A DNA stretch of 63,824 nt, counting the filler, from Octopus bimaculoides (taxonomy: Eukaryota): assembly GCF_001194135.2 (NCBI RefSeq). It is 6 parts of 6 records of this genome, joined end to end, with 100 filler letters (N's around TTAATTAATTAA, not from the genome) between each part and the next. Parts side by side here need not be neighbours in the genome. Positions count along the whole stretch, not along the records: positions 44,584 to 57,938 come from NC_068992.1; 5 more parts are not named here. One strand, given 5' to 3'. The notes under the pieces were generated by a model. The model was not told where the DNA came from and ran no database searches. It saw nothing but the letters and a program-made list of their open reading frames with translations. The position numbers were made by a program, and so were the translations under genes. Position 1 is the first letter of the stretch; the number at the start of each line of letters is the position of its first letter. This document shows, piece after piece, positions 23,283-57,938 of this stretch.

Positions 23283-23469
23283 AGGGTCAGGAGTGGCTGT
23301 GTGGTAAGCAGCTTGCTTACCAACTACATGGTTCCGGCTTCAGTCCAACTGCGTGGCACCTTGGGCAAGTGCCTTTTACTGTAGCCTCGGACCGACCAAA
23401 GCCATGTGAATGGATTTGGGAGATGGAAATTGAAAGAAGCCCGTCGTATATATATATATATATATATAT
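23283..23469 (+). mobile_element. SINE family A, 5' half (gap follows)
   Basis: GGAGTGGCTGTGTGGTAAGCAGCTTGCTTACCAAC...GGCAAGTGCCTTTTACTGTAGCCTCGGACCGACCAAAGCC. Confidence 0.85.
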
Positions 23470-49869: not shown

Positions 49870-50758
49870 AATATATCGTCATAAATATACGTAACTCCTC
49901 ATCATAGCTTTCATTCTTTACATCTCCGGGTGTCCACTATGAAATTCATGTAATATCCATTTCTGTAGTACAGTTGGTACTACCACTCTTTGTGTGAACA
50001 TTAATACATCGTCGCAGAGTGAAAAATGGTTCGCATTCGTGTTTCTCTTTTGTTTATTTTTCAAGGTTTCCTTCTTTTTTATGATGTGTTTACCCTCCGC
50101 CGATTTAATTTTTATATTTTGTACAGTCACTGGCAACTCCTGAATGACATTACACATGACGTTTTTAGTTTCCTTTTCTGATTGTAATGCGGATATCACC
50201 GTATCACCCAGCAGTTCTGCATTCTTCGGAATTAGCCCAGATAAACTATCCGCATGGCTAATATTCTTAGAAGGAATGTACTCCATCTTAAAGATGTAAT
50301 TTAACAATATTCTTTTCTAGGCACAAGGCCCGAAATTTTGGGGGAGGGGACCAGTCGATTAGATTGACTCCAGTACGCAACTGGTACTTAATTTATTGAC
50401 CCCGAAAGGATGAAAGACAAAGTCAACCTCGCCGGAATTTGAACTCAGAACGTAAAGACAGATGAACTACCGCTAAGCATTTCGCCTGGCATGCTAACGT
50501 TTCTGCCAGCTCGCCGCCTTTAACAATATTGTACCCCAGTGTTGTAATCTGTTAGCTGTACGGTTAGGATTCATTTCTTCGATCCGAAAATTGATAGTAA
50601 TGGTCGGTAGTCCGTCTGAAGTCGAAAACTTCTACCGTGGAGAAATCTGTGAAATTTCTCCATCGCAAAAGTAATCGCTAGAGCTTCTTTCTCTATCTGT
50701 AGATTTCATCTGCTGCAACCAAGACACGTGAGGCATGAACCACCACCTCCGTCTTACC
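49870..50758 (-). pseudogene. Ty3/Gypsy (Mag/K02A2.6-like) pol fragment, RNase H to integrase Zn-finger, interrupted by a SINE
   Basis: HASRVL..Y-QIEKEALAITFAMEKFHRFLHGRSFRLQTDYRPLLSIFGSKK..NRLQHWGTI|LLNYIFKMEY..HADSLS..RVVVPTVLQKWILHEFHSGHP..RMKAMMRSYVY. Confidence 0.9.
50312..50518 (-). mobile_element. SINE family B with 12 bp TSD
   Basis: TTTAACAATATT at 50300-50311 and 50519-50530. Confidence 0.9.
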
Positions 50759-51787
50759 NNNNNNNNNNNNNNNNNNNNNNNNNNNNNNNNNNNNNNNNNN
50801 NNNNNNNNNNNNNNNNNNNNNNNNNNNNNNNNNNNNNNNNNNNNNNNNNNNNNNNNNNNNNNNNNNNNNNNNNNNNNNNNNNNNNNNNNNNNNNNNNNNN
50901 NNNNNNNNNNNNNNNNNNNNNNNNNNNNNNNNNNNNNNNNNNNNNNNNNNNNNNNNNNNNNNNNNNNNNNNNNNNNNNNNNNNNNNNNNNNNNNNNNNNN
51001 NNNNNNNNNNNNNNNNNNNNNNNNNNNNNNNNNNNNNNNNNNNNNNNNNNNNNNNNNNNNNNNNNNNNNNNNNNNNNNNNNNNNNNNNNNNNNNNNNNNN
51101 NNNNNNNNNNNNNNNNNNNNNNNNNNNNNNNNNNNNNNNNNNNNNNNNNNNNNNNNNNNNNNNNNNNNNNNNNNNNNNNNNNNNNNNNNNNNNNNNNNNN
51201 NNNNNNNNNNNNNNNNNNNNNNNNNNNNNNNNNNNNNNNNNNNNNNNNNNNNNNNNNNNNNNNNNNNNNNNNNNNNNNNNNNNNNNNNNNNNNNNNNNNN
51301 NNNNNNNNNNNNNNNNNNNNNNNNNNNNNNNNNNNNNNNNNNNNNNNNNNNNNNNNNNNNNNNNNNNNNNNNNNNNNNNNNNNNNNNNNNNNNNNNNNNN
51401 NNNNNNNNNNNNNNNNNNNNNNNNNNNNNNNNNNNNNNCTGTTACCATCCTGATGCCCAAACCAGGGAACCAACCTTCACCAAACCTTGTATAGATGTTG
51501 AATATATATCCAGTTCAATTATAGGCTAATTGGATTTCAATTTCGATAAAGGACCGACTACGAGTGTTGGGCTATTACATGATAAAATGAGAGGGTGCAA
51601 AAGTGTTAGGTTCAGAGAAATGTGATATAATGAGGGTGGTTTATATCAGGGAAGGGGAGGAAACAGGAAGAAATAGACACACAGGGAATGTGAGAGACAG
51701 ACAGAGAGAACGACAGACAGCGACGTCTTCCATATATATAAAATAGAGTTTGTGTGTGTGTGTGTACATATCTTCCTTATGCATTCG

Positions 51788-52803
51788 AAAACCGAGTTGC
51801 TGATTTTGACATATGGGGTATCAAAAGATTCAGTAATCTTACGACTATCAAATAAACTTTATTTTCGTTTACATATTTGCATTACAAAAATTTTACATTA
51901 TTTTTGCTATACGTCAATTATATGTAAACATTTTATACCACGACAACGGTGACGACGTCACATTTTCTATATGAGTGTGTACCTTAAAAGACATCCATTT
52001 CTCTATAGGTTATGATGAAATACAGGCACACACTTTCTCTCTCGCATGCACACGCACATACATACACAAAAGATGTACGCATATGTATTTATGCATGTGT
52101 ATATGCAAGATGTGTGTGAAACAGAGAGAGAGAGAGAGAGAGACTGAATGAGGGCCACTTACACATACATCACACACACCTTCACTCACTCTCTCTCCTT
52201 CTTCCTCTTTCTCTCACGCACAGACGCCACACGCACATACACACACACGCTCGTACGTCCATTTCATATACACCTACATACATCTTTCACTTTCTCTTCT
52301 TTTTCACTTTCTGCTCTATTCAAAGCATAAGGAAATAAAAAAAATTACGGAAATTAATGAATATATTGGAAAACTGAGTTGCCGATTTTGACGTATGGGA
52401 TATCAAAAGATTCAGTAATCTTTCAGCTAACAAATAAACTTTATTTCATTTATATATTTGCATAACAAAGAATTTTCATTATAGTTTTTCTATAATTCAT
52501 CTATCCTAAACGACATTTTATTACCTCGACGACGATGACGTCACATTTTCTATATGTGTACCTTAAAAAACACCCATTTCTTTTTATGTTATGAGGAAAT
52601 ACAGTCACTCACATTCTCTTTCACTTGCACACGCACACAGACCCACAAAAAAGATGTATGCATATGTATTTATGTACGTGTATATGAAAGATGATGTCTG
52701 TGTGAGACACACAGAGAGTGTCACTTACAAATACATGCAAAAAATGCATACGCCTTCATTCACTCACGCTCTCACACACACACAAACACACACATGCACA
52801 CAT

Positions 52804-52837
<34 letters not shown>

Positions 52838-53000
52838 CCATCTCTTATACACGTACATACATCTTTCACTTTCTCCTCTCTTTCACTTTCTACTCTCACT
52901 TCAAAGCAAATATCGCCTTTTCACTTTCTCCTCTCTTTCAATTTCTGCTCTCTTCAAAGCATAAAGAAATAAAACCAAATTTTACGGAAGTTAACGAACA
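51788..53000 (+). repeat. Diverged tandem duplication (~580 + ~630 bp)
   Basis: Units start AAAAC[C/T]GAGTTGC..GATTTTGAC at ~51788 and ~52370 and are colinear to TTACGGAA.TTAA.GAA. Confidence 0.9.
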
Positions 53001-53376: not shown

Positions 53377-53612
53377 GTTTCTTATTTCTTTATTGCCCAC
53401 AAGGGGCTAAACATAGAGGGGACAAACAAGGACAGACAAACGGATTAAGTCGATTACATCGACCCCAGTGCGTAACTGGTACTTAATTTATCGACCCCCA
53501 AAAGGATGAAAGGTAAAGTCGACCTCGGCGGAATTTGTACTCAGAACGTAACGGCAGACGAAATACCGCTAAGCATTTCACCCAGCGTGCTAACGTTTCT
53601 GCCAGCTCGCCG
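53377..53612 (-). mobile_element. SINE family B variant-tail copy
   Basis: Family B head plus tail TTATTTCTTTATTGCCCACAAGGGGCTAAAC (also at 34505). CTTTACCTTT on both flanks. Confidence 0.85.
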
Positions 53613-54090
53613 CTTTACCTTTTGTTTCTAGCATGTATAAGGTGACATTTGCACCATTCTTCCTCTGATTTTTTTTCCTAAATTTCTACCTATTCCTACT
53701 TTTTCAATACAGGGGATTAGGATTTCGCCCCAAACACGTTCTCAATATGTTAATTCTCTCCCTCCCTATCCCAATTTCTTCATTCTTTACTTCTTTCGAA
53801 TATTTTCTTGGTAATCCACGGAGAAAAAACAGAGAGTACGAACCTTTAAGAATTTTCTTCTTTTTTCTTAAAGAAACACTAAAATCTCCTCCCTAAACAT
53901 CCACCCATCACCTCATCACTTTCAAAATGCTACAAACTCCCAATGTTTCACTTTTAGCTTTTTTGGAAAGCGGGAAGTTCCTTCAGATATAATATCGTTT
54001 ACCTGTTGTTTCTAGCATGTCGGGTTTTCTGATGGTGCTCAACCGCCAAGTGCCCACAAAGGCCAATTTTGTTGGTCATTCTGATGTTTA

Positions 54091-54572
54091 CGGTTTTTTG
54101 CAATGAAGTAATGTTCTCATTCTTCTATTTAAAAAATGCGTAAGAAACAGCTGCAAAGAGCTGACATTGGAATACAACAGCATTATTTTCCATCTAAATA
54201 AAACACTGTAAAGGTAGAATTACAAATATGAAATAGTGGTGCAACAAGGCACCAATGTTTGTTGGAAATAGCAGTCGGTAACAGTATGACGCTATGTAAA
54301 ACTTCACTGAATATATACTGGCAAAGATGTGTGCGGGCTACGAATATAAAAAATTTTCATCTTACCTGTAGTAAGAACACCGGATAGATGAACAACCTAG
54401 AGTGGATAATCTAGTACTCGAGTTTCGGACTTTCCTAATACGCCTGTTATCGAAAATTCGGTTAGTCCCCATCAGCTAGATTCCCTAATGGATAATTGTA
54501 AGCTCATTACAGCTGTTTCTCATGCATTTCTTAAATACAAGAATGAGAACATTAGTTCATTGCAAAAGATCG
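54091..54572. mobile_element. MITE, ~480 bp, ~75 bp TIRs, TA flanks (Tc1/mariner-type)
   Basis: 54091-54165 (CGGTTTTTTGCAATGAAGTAATGTTCTCATTCTT..AGAAACAGCTG) is the reverse complement of ~54498-54572. TA lies immediately outside both ends. Confidence 0.8.
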
Positions 54573-55704
54573 TAATCATTAGATGAAGCATAATTTCGAA
54601 AACAAAGAATATCTGAAGAATACAGCAGAGTCATTGGTGCCTTGTTGTGGCATCATTTGGTCAGGTCTATTATGTTTACATTTTATTGGTGATTTCACTA
54701 GGATATTCCGCCAGTACTCCTTTTTTTTATGAGTGGCTATGGTTTCTACCATACTATGGCTCCTCATTTCTTTGGCCTCCATGTTATCCTTCCGATGTAT
54801 CTCATTATACTGTATCTCATTATACTGTTAACTCCACAAAGTCTGCATCGGTTTATCACATTTTGCTACTTTTTCTGCGTCTCTGTCCTTTTTGTACATA
54901 AGGTTTTTGGTTGATATTTCTTTTTCCTGTATTTCAAACGCATACCCTTCGAAGTGAGAGTTAGTAATCCCGGTTATTGCTCCAAGATAGACTGCTTTGA
55001 TGATCAATGTTACTATCCTTCCGGAGATTTCTACAAACATATCCCTGCATGGTCTTCTGCTTTTATACGCTCATCCTTTCATCTGATGATGCGTTGCAGT
55101 AAAGTCGTGCGACTTCTTTGGGCTTGTATTTAAGGTTATCAGAGAAGAAATGCTACTCAAGTAGCTTCTCTCCGACTCTCATGATGTTATCAGCCTCATG
55201 TATGCAAACTTGGTCAAGTTCGACACTTGGTGGTGAAAAGATGTTGCCGAAGGGATATGATACGACATTAAAAGGTAGTCTGGATCAATGTTAAGCTTCT
55301 GTCCCTTTGTTTATGCTTTAGGTGGTGGCAATCTACGCCGCTATTGATGTGGAAATGATGTGTGCTTATTAGTATCCTCCGAATTTTCACATTCAATGGC
55401 TCGGATCTCACCAACGTCCGATCAAGAAGCCCAAATGTAGGTATGAGTACTGGCACTGCAAACACATCATGGGCCAATATTTTATTGAATACAGAGAGTT
55501 CTGAGGTCCATATTTTCTTTATTCAGCTGTAATATTCTTTAGTGACATGTGTCTTGTTACAGGTGCCCCCATAAGATATGTTTTTATCCATCCCTAGATA
55601 TCTATAACATTTCTCATCAAATACAGGGGAAACAGTTAAGTCATCGGTGGAGGTGTTGTTAGTAAGGTTTACAGTTTTCCCTTTTTTCATAGCCATATAG
55701 CAAC

Positions 55705-56289: not shown

Positions 56290-56670
56290 GATTTGTTTCA
56301 GTCATTGGGCTCCAGCTGCGCTGGGGCACTGCCTCGGAGAATTTAATCGAACAAATTGTCCCCATTACTTTTAAATCTTGTATTTTTCTGTTGTTCTCTT
56401 TTGTTGAACCGCTAATTTTAGGGAACGTGAAGAAACCAACAGCGGTTGATAAGCAATAGTGAATACAAAAATACACACAGACAGATATTTATAATTATAT
56501 ATGTGTGTGCGTGTGTACGTCGGTCTTTCAACACTTTCCATCTACCAAATTCACTCACGAAACATTTGGACGGCTTGGAGCGATATAAAAGTTAATTGCT
56601 CAAGATGCTGCGCAGTGGGACTGAACTCGAAACCAAGTGGTTGCAAAGTGTGCTTCTTAACCATACACCC
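56290..56670 (-). mobile_element. SINE family A, diverged
   Basis: TTTCAGTCATT..GCTGGGGCACTGCC..TCCATCTACCAAATTCACTCAC..GCGCAGTGGGACTGAAC. Confidence 0.75.
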
Positions 56671-56695
56671 ATGTCTTTACCCCCTCTCTCTCTCT

Positions 56696-56871: not shown

Positions 56872-57137
56872 TGTTATATGGACTATTAGATATGTAATTC
56901 GTCTGACGTTCCGTGTGTCCATGTGGTTCGTCTGAGTTCATTGTTTCATTGTTGTTGTCTTGTGTGACTGTCGTAGTAAAAGGTCATTGATATATATATG
57001 GCGGACATGACTTTTGTTTATTCATAACGAACATTGGGTGAGTGCGTTCTTTGTATGTAATTGAATAATAAATGTAATAATTAAATTTGTATAACTCGTT
57101 GTGTTATCTCTGCGAGTCTTCCGAGGGAAATACAACA
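56872..57137 (+). mobile_element. 5' LTR of a Ty3/Gypsy retrotransposon (266 bp)
   Basis: Starts TGT and ends ACA. TATATATA at ~56991, AATAAA at 57067. Followed within ~70 nt by a gag ORF. No second LTR is available to confirm the boundaries. Confidence 0.65.
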
Positions 57138-57209
57138 GTTTTGGTCGGCCCGAGGCTATAGTAGAAGGCACTTGCTTACTTTACCGTAAAATTATTCATC
57201 GTAATAACA

Positions 57210-57938
57210 ATGGCTGAAAAACAGACAGTAGAGCTTATTAAATTGTTTAGGGAACAAATGGACAAGCAAATGCAACAACATCAGAGAGATATGGACGCTC
57301 TGTTAAAACTGTTTGGTGCTCGAGAAGTTGAAGGCGATCCTAGTGGCTATTTTTCAGCTGCTTCGACAACGGNNNNNNNNNNNNNNNNNNNNNNNNNNNN
57401 NNNNNNNNNNNNNNNNNNNNNNNNNNNNNNNNNNNNNNNNNNNNNNNNNNNNNNNNNNNNNNNNNNNNNNNNNNNNNNNNNNNNNNNNNNNNNNNNNNNN
57501 NNNNNNNNNNNNNNNNNNNNNNNNNNNNNNNNNNNNNNNNNNNNNNNNNNNNNNNNNNNNNNNNNNNNNNNNNNNNNNNNNNNNNNNNNNNNNNNNNNNN
57601 NNNNNNNNNNNNNNNNNNNNNNNNNCCTAAAGATATCAACAACTTGATAATGGACGAAATCGTTGACTTCATGAAGGAACAGTTCGACCCTAAACTTTTC
57701 ATTGTGAGAGAGCGTTTCAGGTTTTGGAGTGATATGCAGCGGAAACCAGGCGAAACTCTCCAGGAGCTGACAGCAAGTATACGCCAGGGTGCAGCTACCT
57801 GTGATTTTCCAGCGATCACCAACCCACAGGATGAAGCTCTGAGACAGAGATTCATATGTTCGGTTAACAATGAAGCGGTTCTGAAGGCGCTTTTTAAGAT
57901 AAAAGACTCAGAACTAGATTTTGCCCGTGCTGTCCAGG
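57210..57938 (+). CDS. Ty3/Gypsy (Mag/K02A2.6-like) Gag, partial, interrupted by gaps
   Basis: MAEKQTVELIKLFREQM.. and FMKEQFDPKLFIVRERFRFWSDMQRKPGETLQEL..RQGAATCDF..DEALRQRFICSVNNEAVLKALF: retrotransposon Gag signature (ERFxF..xQxxGES..L..LA..C.F..D.LRD.F). Confidence 0.8.

What the first reader, a model, noticed from the sequence alone, without database searches (positions are those of the whole stretch)
56872..57210. Gypsy LTR retrotransposon whose primer-binding site is complementary to the host SINE RNA
Seen: immediately after the LTR end (..TACAACA 57137) comes GTTT-TGGTCGGCCCGAGGCTATAGTAGAAGGCACTTGC (TGG at 57142), then gag ATG at 57210. 57140-57167 is identical over 28 nt to the antisense family A SINE at 6917-6944, and the match extends to 57175 versus the copy at 23365-23400. 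It is the reverse complement of the SINE's CORE-adjacent segment ..GCCTCGGGCCGACCA. There is no other SINE sequence and no TSD here. Known: a PBS normally starts TGG just after the 5' LTR and pairs with a tRNA's 3' CCA, and some elements use tRNA fragments. Inference: the internal CCA of a processed, very abundant SINE transcript could act as the (-)-strand primer, i.e. a SINE-primed LTR element. Alternative: a one-off replacement of an ordinary PBS (I recall TGGCGACGAG in related Mag-like elements) via TTGG..CGAGG microhomology, which could itself be the footprint of a mis-priming event copied during plus-strand synthesis.
Basis: partly seen in the sequence, partly recalled or inferred. Interest (0 to 1): 0.8.

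Follow-up and report, generated by a model that had tools for sequence, protein, structure and literature searches.

The report
SINE-derived primer site in octopus retrotransposon
One Gypsy-type retrotransposon copy in Octopus bimaculoides has a 36-base antisense piece of the host's abundant SINE exactly where its relatives carry a tRNA-binding primer site, which suggests, from one copy only and so without proof, that a SINE RNA once primed its reverse transcription.

Summary
A 266-bp 5' LTR (56872-57137, TGTTAT...ACAACA) is followed by GTTT and then TGGTCGGCCCGAGGCTATAGTAGAAGGCACTTGC, with the gag ATG at 57210. This segment matches, in antisense, a SINE copy inside the same piece (47094-47127, 30/34; alignment score 26 against 8.3±1.2 for shuffles). 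The segment lies inside the SINE's CORE domain, not next to it.

Nine related Ty3/Gypsy copies from four other cephalopod assemblies share the LTR termini, which confirms the boundary. Every one of them has an ordinary TGGCG... tRNA-type primer-binding site 7-9 nt after ACAACA. None of their loci contains this SINE. So the window copy has had its primer-binding site replaced by SINE sequence, in register (SINE CCA opposite the site's TGG), in the orientation expected if sense SINE RNA were the primer and were copied.

My best reading is a scar made during reverse transcription by SINE RNA annealed at the primer site. Whether the family routinely uses SINE RNA as primer could not be tested, because no other O. 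bimaculoides DNA was reachable. A caveat is that yeast Ty3 inherits this site from its own RNA, not from the primer. The finding is of moderate interest now and would be of high interest if further independent copies carry the patch.

The parts
56872..57137 (+). 5' LTR, 266 bp, with termini TGTTAT...ACAACA. It has a TATA-like ATATATATATGG near 56993 and AATAAA-type signals near 57068-57085.
   Evidence: The termini are homologous to the paired LTRs of relatives (TGTTGT...ACAACA).
57138..57141 (+). Spacer GTTT between the LTR end and TGG. Relatives have 7-9 nt here (GATCATT, GGAATTGAT, GGGATAAAT). The last two T (57140-57141) may already belong to the SINE-derived patch.
57140..57175 (+). 36-nt patch that is antisense to the CORE domain of the host tRNA-derived SINE. 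It occupies the primer-binding-site position. TGG at 57142-57144 is the complement of an internal CCA of the SINE.
   Evidence: 30/34 to the in-piece SINE copy; score 26 against shuffles 8.3±1.2.
57176..57209 (+). Rest of the untranslated leader (TTACTTTACC...AATAACA). It has no similarity to the SINE or to the relatives' leaders, and it contains no second TGG or PBS candidate.
57210..57373 (+). gag N-terminus (MAEKQTVELIKLF...), 54 open codons, cut by an N run.
   Evidence: Relatives begin MAETTELIKLL at the same relative position.
57626..57937 (+). gag fragment, 104 open codons, cut by the end of the piece. It is 93% identical to an Octopus bimaculoides UniRef protein.
46830..47203 (-). Full-length copy of the tRNA-derived CORE-SINE (sense on the minus strand). 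Its segment at 47094-47127 is the counterpart of the patch.
   Evidence: (D14, D17).
56290..56680 (-). Second, more diverged copy of the same SINE superfamily, about 190 bp upstream of the LTR. It is not contiguous with the patch.
   Evidence: 66% over 396 nt.

Best explanation
This is the 5' end of a Ty3/Gypsy LTR retrotransposon of Octopus bimaculoides. Its ancestral tRNA-type primer-binding site (PBS) has been replaced by 34-36 nt copied from the CORE domain of the host's very abundant tRNA-derived SINE.

Most likely the replacement was made during reverse transcription. A sense-strand SINE RNA, or a fragment of it, was probably carried in the particle as other Pol III transcripts are. It annealed at the PBS region, helped by the TTTGG and CCGA microhomologies. 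It then served as primer and/or as template for the plus strand. Its complement was therefore written into the element's plus strand, starting at the PBS TGG (the complement of the SINE's internal CCA) and running 36 nt, because an unmodified RNA has no m1A58-type stop.

Shown:
- The patch, its SINE origin, its antisense orientation and its register.
- The LTR boundary.
- The tRNA-type PBS in all relatives.

Inferred:
- That RNA rather than DNA was the donor.
- That priming was involved.
- That the event is a scar carried by this copy or sublineage rather than an established priming system.
For: (1) The patch is SINE-derived far beyond chance.

(2) Nine related copies in four other cephalopod assemblies have LTR ends homologous to the window's. 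After a 7-9-nt spacer they carry TGGCGTCGCCGAC, TGGCGCAGTCGACAGG, TGGTGCAGTCGAC or TGGCGCTGCGAGCAGGG, i.e. ordinary tRNA-type sites. The window alone deviates, at the same position.

(3) The orientation is antisense SINE on the element's sense strand, with the SINE's CCA opposite TGG. Plus-strand copying of a sense SINE RNA primer would give exactly this. Minus-strand copying of a Pol III SINE transcript would give the opposite orientation (reasoned from the standard reverse-transcription scheme; PMC7472051).

(4) No other PBS candidate (TGG) exists between the patch and the gag ATG.

(5) There are no SINE termini, no other SINE sequence and no duplication around the patch, so it is not an ordinary SINE insertion.

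(6) Retroviral particles package Pol III transcripts, and host RNA (e.g. 7SL) can be patched into genomes through microhomology (PMC4997597). Primer switches are documented for MLV, HIV-1 and ETn (PMC7472051).

(7) SINEs make up about 11.6% of a sister species' genome (PMC13282606). The relatives with a tRNA-type PBS come from genomes whose sampled loci (about 180 kb) lack this SINE.
Against: - Only one copy was seen.
- For the Metaviridae model Ty3, and for Ty1, the PBS is reported to be inherited from the RNA on both strands and not from the primer (PMC7472051 citing Lauermann & Boeke 1997). If that holds here, a primer would leave no footprint.
- A 36-nt copy of the primer would leave a non-homologous 3' tail at the second strand transfer, which would need an extra microhomology-mediated step.
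- No processing activity is known that would give a SINE RNA a 3'-OH at this internal CCA.
- The complementarity between the SINE segment and the relatives' PBS is weak (9/15 ungapped, by eye).
- The ancestral PBS of the O. bimaculoides family itself is unknown.
Confidence: 0.5

Rival explanations
1. Family-level system. The patch is the working primer-binding site of an active O. bimaculoides Gypsy family, which uses a processed SINE RNA ending ...GGGCCGACCA-3' as minus-strand primer in place of tRNA. Alternatively, an uncut SINE RNA could be cleaved at the duplex end by the element's RNase H, as happens in Tf1 self-priming.
For: - The register, orientation and absence of any other PBS are the same as for the best explanation.
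- Both visible gag fragments are open, and a 93%-identical O. bimaculoides protein shows that the family has other copies.
The in-piece SINE copy has lost one CpG and differs at 4/34. This fits a young or continually renewed site.
- If Gypsy elements inherit the PBS from the RNA as Ty3 does, a patch present in a normally integrated copy is more easily explained as inherited from a parent that replicated with it.
Against: - No second copy could be examined.
- No SINE RNA with that 3' end is known.
- All relatives use tRNA-type sites.
- Most aberrant retroelement copies are dead ends.
Confidence: 0.2
2. Recombinational patch unrelated to priming. During minus-strand synthesis through the leader, RT switched onto a co-packaged Pol II transcript that happened to contain the SINE in antisense. 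It then switched back at the TTTGG microhomology, deleting the real PBS. The product integrated but cannot replicate.
For: - Non-homologous 'patch repair' with host RNA through short microhomologies is documented for retroviruses (PMC4997597).
- SINEs are so common that many transcripts carry antisense copies.
- TTTGG is shared between the relatives' spacer+PBS (..CATTTGGCG) and the SINE (..CTTTGGTCGG).
Against: - It needs the rarer antisense RNA form.
- It needs the left junction to fall by chance on the PBS start, with a TGG in register.
- It needs two switches within 36 nt.
Confidence: 0.15
3. DNA-level event after integration. Possibilities are templated break repair or gene conversion using one of the many genomic SINE copies, or an antisense SINE insertion in the leader later trimmed by two deletions.
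For: The SINE is everywhere, with two copies in this 13-kb piece and one only 190 bp upstream. Microhomology TTTGG is present at the left junction.
Against: - No SINE ends, tail or TSD remain.
- Two deletions, or a templated insertion, would have to remove the PBS exactly and restore a TGG in register.
- The neighbouring SINE copy (56290-56680) is too diverged to be the donor.
Confidence: 0.07
4. Assembly artefact. A short-read assembler joined two loci through a shared SINE k-mer.
For: The piece comes from a gap-rich draft (N runs at 57374-57625 and elsewhere), and the patch is a high-copy sequence.
Against: - The stretch 56872-57373 is gap-free.
- A chimeric join would still require one locus with LTR end+SINE and another with SINE+gag leader.
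- Both flanks belong to the same element type, in the right order and spacing.
Confidence: 0.04
5. Ordinary tRNA priming. A host tRNA 3' end happens to match the first nucleotides of the patch, so the SINE similarity is irrelevant to priming.
For: The site starts with TGG at the right place. From memory, tRNA-Ile(AAU) ends ..ACGGGCCACCA, which would pair 4+6 nt with a one-base bulge. This is a lead only.
Against: - A perfect partner would need an acceptor stem 5'-CGGCCCG, which is unusual for eukaryotic tRNAs (established knowledge).
- ARAGORN and Rfam find no tRNA in the piece.
- The identity to the SINE runs 34-36 nt, far beyond any acceptor/T-arm match.
Confidence: 0.03

Closest known systems
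tRNA-primed primer-binding sites of Ty3/Gypsy (Metaviridae) elements and retroviruses
   Same: The position is a few nt after the U5 end ..CA. The site starts with TGG, the complement of a 3'-terminal CCA. It lies between the LTR and gag.
   Different: The complementary RNA is not a tRNA 3' end but an internal stretch of a SINE CORE domain. The complementarity runs 34-36 nt rather than 8-18.
Primer switching and PBS replacement in retroviruses and ERVs (MLV Pro to Gln, HIV-1 Lys3 to Lys1,2, ETn to Lys1,2; PMC7472051)
   Same: A PBS is rewritten to match whichever RNA primed, because the plus strand copies the primer.
   Different: Known switches are from one tRNA to another tRNA. Here the donor would be a SINE transcript. 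Ty3-type elements are reported not to transmit the primer copy.
Retroviral 'patch repair' and tertiary-template insertions using packaged host RNAs such as 7SL (PMC4997597)
   Same: A short stretch of an abundant Pol III-type host RNA is inserted by RT through microhomology.
   Different: Those patches are not tied to the PBS and have no required orientation or register.
Tf1/sushi self-priming
   Same: A non-tRNA RNA anneals to the PBS, and RNase H creates the primer end.
   Different: In Tf1 the primer is the element's own 5' end. Here the LTR has no complement to the PBS beyond chance (longest 5 nt).
Ohshima-Okada strong-stop DNA model for the origin of tRNA-derived SINEs
   Same: It links SINEs, primer tRNAs and retroelement PBS/U5 regions.
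   Different: The direction is opposite. That model derives the SINE from primer tRNA plus the U5-R complement. Here an ancient CORE domain (shared with MIR-type SINEs, PMC4824008) was copied into the retroelement, downstream of U5.
Helenus, Ajax and Cassandra: LTR retrotransposons carrying tRNA- or 5S-like sequences (PMC10886601)
   Same: Pol III-type small-RNA-derived sequence sits inside an LTR retroelement.
   Different: In those elements the sequence is in the LTR, in sense, and is explicitly not complementary to the PBS. Here it is at the PBS itself.

Membership tests
Ty3/Gypsy LTR retrotransposon | LTR with TG...CA termini and short terminal inverted repeat | tested here: met
   TGTTAT...ACAACA at 56872-57137, homologous to TGTTGT...ACAACA of the paired LTRs in relatives.
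Ty3/Gypsy LTR retrotransposon | Two LTRs, PPT before the 3' LTR, target-site duplication | not testable with these tools
   The piece ends at 57938 inside gag. Relatives show paired LTRs and the PPT ..GGGGAGG.
Ty3/Gypsy LTR retrotransposon | gag followed by pol in the order RT - RNase H - integrase | tested here: inconclusive
   Only gag is visible in the window, and it has no Pfam hit. Relatives with 74-85% identical gag have RVT_1, RT_RNaseH(_2), Integrase_H2C2 and rve in that order.
   No reference set was at hand. The TGGCG.. PBS of the relatives fits my recollection of tRNA-Ser use in this lineage, which is a lead only.
tRNA-primed PBS | At least 8-18 nt complementary to the 3' end (..CCA) of a host tRNA, starting within a few nt of U5 | not testable with these tools
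   No O. bimaculoides tRNA set is available, and there is no tRNA in the piece. The required acceptor stem 5'-CGGCCCG is atypical. Relatives meet the pattern with TGGCG.. sites.
Tf1-type self-priming element | PBS complementary to the 5' end of the element's own transcript (start of R) | tested here: not met
   The longest LTR-PBS complement is 5 nt. Shuffled LTRs give a mean of 5.8.
SINE-primed LTR element (hypothetical new class) | The same SINE-complementary PBS in several independent insertions of the family | not testable with these tools
   No other O. bimaculoides DNA is held in any collection.
SINE-primed LTR element (hypothetical new class) | PBS-position sequence complementary to SINE sense RNA, with TGG opposite a CCA | tested here: met
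   57142-57175 against the SINE copy at 47094-47127, antisense, 30/34.
SINE-primed LTR element (hypothetical new class) | Existence of a SINE-derived RNA with a 3'-OH at that CCA | not testable with these tools
   This needs small-RNA or 3'-end sequencing data.
CORE-SINE (OR1-like) for the donor repeat | tRNA-related head followed by the conserved CORE domain | tested here: inconclusive
   The head contains GGTTCCGCGTTCAGTCCC (B-box-like) and is followed by CCTTGGGCAAGT..., which I recall as the start of the MIR CORE. PMC4824008 lists octopus OR1 as a CORE-SINE. No SINE library was available, and ARAGORN and Rfam do not call the head a tRNA.

The most novel reading that the evidence does not exclude
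An active Ty3/Gypsy family in Octopus has abandoned tRNA priming. It uses an internal CCA-containing stretch of the genome's most abundant SINE transcript as its minus-strand primer. This would be the first LTR retroelement primed by another mobile element's RNA, coupling LTR-element replication to Pol III SINE expression.
Probability: 0.2. Interest if true: 0.85.

Novelty: new variant of a known kind. Interest (0 to 1): 0.5.

Why it matters
All well-studied LTR retroelements start DNA synthesis from a tRNA, a tRNA fragment, or their own 5' end. How elements change primers is acknowledged to be unknown (PMC10886601).

A primer site rewritten from a SINE RNA, even once, would be a natural record that non-tRNA Pol III transcripts can enter the priming complex of a Gypsy element. 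It would show one route to primer switching.

If the site is functional and inherited, it would define a new priming mode. It would also be a direct dependency between two unrelated classes of mobile elements, in a genome where SINEs are exceptionally abundant and expressed. In addition, the element's leader would be a 36-bp perfect target for any SINE-derived small RNAs.

Tried and rejected
- I tried to obtain other copies from O. bimaculoides. The gag C-fragment search gave only two UniRef O. bimaculoides proteins without DNA. The best of these is not on record in the contig index. The gag N-terminus found nothing.
- DNA pattern scans of viral, metagenome and prokaryote-genome collections gave nothing usable. 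I searched for the LTR end, the LTR-patch junction and the SINE segment. The results were either empty or chance hits in phage and bacterial contigs, including a conserved ABC-transporter motif. Loci L009-L088 are irrelevant.
- L090 has a truncated 5' end and gave no PBS.
- Self-priming is rejected.
- A conserved RNA structure for R-U5-leader is not supported (z = -1.0).
- Rfam finds nothing at the site.
- The origin of the SINE segment from the retroelement (strong-stop model) is rejected. The segment is part of the widely shared CORE domain and lies downstream of U5, not in it.
- An ordinary SINE insertion is rejected. There are no SINE ends, tail or TSD, and only 36 internal nt are present.

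Full report
**What is there**

The gap-free stretch 56872-57373 holds a 266-bp block that begins TGTTAT and ends GGAAATACAACA (57137). It is followed by:
- GTTT;
- TGG at 57142;
- the run TGGTCGGCCCGAGGCTATAGTAGAAGGCACTTGC, ending at 57175;
- 34 nt of AT-rich leader;
- an ATG at 57210 that opens a gag-like frame (MAEKQTVELIKLF...).

The frame is interrupted by an N run (57374-57625). It resumes as a 104-codon open fragment up to the end of the piece. That fragment is 93% identical to an uncharacterised Octopus bimaculoides protein, so the host is O. bimaculoides or a very close relative.

**Is the SINE match real?**

The first copy reads TGGTTGGCCCGAGTCTATAGTAAAAGACACTTGC at 47094-47127. That is 30/34 identical to the post-LTR segment. 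The local alignment score is 26, against 8.3±1.2 (maximum 12) for 500 shuffles. The 15-mer with two mismatches has a chance expectation of 0.02.

On the right, similarity stops sharply after ..CACTTGC. The SINE continues CCAAGGTGC, while the element continues TTACTTTAC. On the left, at most TT+TGG (57140-57144) is shared. So the patch is 34-36 nt long, internal to the SINE, and has no SINE ends, tail or duplication.

In SINE sense orientation the patch is GCAAGTGCCTTCTACTATAGCCTCGGGCCGACCA(AA). It starts 8 nt 3' of the ..GCACC end of the tRNA-related head (..GGTTCCGCGTTCAGTCCCATTGCGTAGCACC) and overlaps the motif CCTTGGGCAAGT. I recognise that motif, from memory, as the start of the CORE domain of MIR-type SINEs. 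Octopus OR1 is listed as a CORE-SINE in PMC4824008. The patch is therefore part of the CORE, not adjacent to it. Because the CORE domain is ancient and shared across phyla, the direction of transfer must be from SINE to retroelement.

**Is the LTR boundary right, and what do relatives have there?**

No other O. bimaculoides DNA could be reached, so I fetched genomic loci encoding the closest gag homologues (74-85% amino-acid identity) from ENA assemblies of other cephalopods.
- Six loci came from ERZ26696912 (L001-L006).
- One locus each came from ERZ25067906 (L007), ERZ25067901 (L008), ERZ25070167 (L089) and ERZ22157276 (L090; 5' end destroyed).

These elements have paired LTRs. The LTRs begin TGTTGT directly after a polypurine tract ..GGGGAGG and end ..A(C/T)ACAACA. 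The 3' copies are followed by unrelated flanks. Their pol genes carry RVT_1, RT_RNaseH, Integrase_H2C2 and rve in Ty3/Gypsy order. The window's termini (TGTTAT ... GAGGGAAATACAACA) align with theirs (..GAGAGAAACACAACA), so 57137 is the true U5 end.

The sequence after the LTR in the relatives is as follows.

| Loci | Spacer | Primer-binding site (PBS) |
|---|---|---|
| Five ERZ26696912 copies | 7-nt (GATCATT in three; GATCAAT in L003, GATCATC in L006) | TGGCGTCGCCGAC (TGGCGTCGCTGC in L005) |
| L008 | GGAATTGAT | TGGCGCAGTCGACAGG |
| L007 | GGAGTTAAT | TGGTGCAGTCGAC |
| L089 | GGGATAAAT | TGGCGCTGCGAGCAGGG |
| Window | GTTT | the SINE-derived run |

The sixth ERZ26696912 copy, L002, has lost the end of U5 and the spacer by deletion but keeps TGGCGTCGCCGC.

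All the relatives' sites are ordinary tRNA-type sites with a G discriminator. From memory they resemble tRNA-Ser 3' ends, which is a lead and not a test. The window is the only one with the SINE-derived sequence at that place, and it has no second TGG before gag. None of the relatives' loci (about 180 kb) contains this SINE. In contrast, the 13-kb window piece has two copies, and SINEs make up about 11.6% of the O. vulgaris genome (PMC13282606).

**Alternatives tested at the site**

- ARAGORN and Rfam find no tRNA or any other RNA family at 56872-57210, or any tRNA in the piece.
- A perfect tRNA partner would need an acceptor stem beginning CGGCCCG, which is atypical.
- Tf1-type self-priming fails. 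The longest complement between the LTR and the PBS region is 5 nt, below the shuffle mean of 5.8.
- The R-U5-leader RNA is not unusually structured (z = -1.0).

**Mechanism**

In the standard scheme the primer's 3' end pairs with the PBS. The plus-strand strong-stop DNA later copies the primer's 3' part, so the plus-strand PBS is the complement of the primer (PMC7472051).

A sense SINE RNA with a 3' end at its internal ..GACCA would therefore leave antisense SINE sequence beginning at TGG immediately after the spacer. This is what is seen. An unmodified RNA lacks the m1A58-type block that limits the tRNA copy to 18 nt (established knowledge). That would explain a longer, 36-nt copy.

Minus-strand template switching onto a Pol III SINE transcript would give the opposite orientation. 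A recombinational patch therefore requires a Pol II RNA that carries the SINE in antisense, plus a chance coincidence of the junction with the PBS start. Retroviral particles do package Pol III RNAs, and they do patch host RNA such as 7SL into genomes through microhomology (PMC4997597). Here TTTGG and CCGA are shared, in register, between the relatives' spacer+PBS and the SINE.

I therefore favour an RT-mediated event involving SINE RNA at the primer site (0.5 as a scar of uncertain heritability).

There is an important caveat. The same review states that Ty1 and Ty3 transmit the PBS from the RNA on both strands (Lauermann & Boeke 1997). If octopus Gypsy elements behave like Ty3, a one-off primer footprint is harder to obtain. 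A patch found in a properly integrated copy then becomes relatively more likely to have been inherited from a parent that replicated with it, or to be a recombinational patch.

A 36-nt primer copy also creates a non-homologous 3' tail at the second strand transfer. That needs an extra microhomology step. The window's leader is short (72 nt against about 90-190 nt in relatives), which is compatible with an accompanying deletion but does not prove one.

**What could not be done**

The decisive tabulation of the 40 nt after every 5' LTR of this family in the O. bimaculoides genome was not possible. The following all failed to retrieve Octopus sensu stricto DNA:
- protein searches;
- the exact-protein contig index;
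- DNA pattern scans of the viral, metagenome and prokaryotic-genome collections.

The pattern hits that did come back are phage or bacterial chance matches.

**Verdict**

Compared with known systems this is a variant of primer-site switching or patching. It has a non-tRNA donor, a SINE CORE, which I did not find described in two full-text searches or in the reviews I read. Interest is moderate now (0.5). It would be high (about 0.85) if several independent insertions share the patch.

Noticed in passing
window 50353-50520 and 53448-53616: Two copies (87-88% identical) of a different interspersed repeat (..AGTCGATTAGATTGACTCCAGTACGCAACTGGTACTTAATTTATTGACCCC..). This is probably a second SINE family of the octopus genome (D8 and D16).
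   Followed up: no
window 51783-52340 and 52365-52975: A tandem duplication of roughly 580 bp with 77-91% identical segments (D9-D13), rich in CA/CT microsatellite.
   Followed up: no
window 54080-54166 / 54497-54583: Inverted repeat with 87-nt arms, 86% complementary, 330 nt apart (I1). It looks like a fold-back or MITE-type DNA transposon remnant.
   Followed up: partly
window 49918-50307 (minus strand): 129-aa ORF ending ..LQKWILHEFHSGHPEM, which is reminiscent of the N-terminal H2C2 zinc-finger region of a retroelement integrase. There is no Pfam hit. It may be the remnant of another retroelement.
   Followed up: partly
L002 8100-8200 and 8465-8500: In this relative's locus the 5' LTR is itself preceded by a polypurine tract, so the arrangement is tandem or LTR-sharing. 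Its U5 end and spacer are partly deleted (..GAAACACA|TTTGGCGTCGCCGC).
   Followed up: no
L001-L008, L089, L090: About 180 kb from four or five other cephalopod assemblies (ENA ERZ26696912, ERZ25067906, ERZ25067901, ERZ25070167, ERZ22157276) contains no copy of the CORE-SINE that is dense in the window. This suggests the SINE family is restricted to the Octopus lineage or is much rarer elsewhere.
   Followed up: partly
window 57374-57625: The N run inside gag is 252 nt, but the two gag fragments are in different frames relative to it. The gap size is an estimate, and nothing can be said about gag integrity across it.
   Followed up: yes
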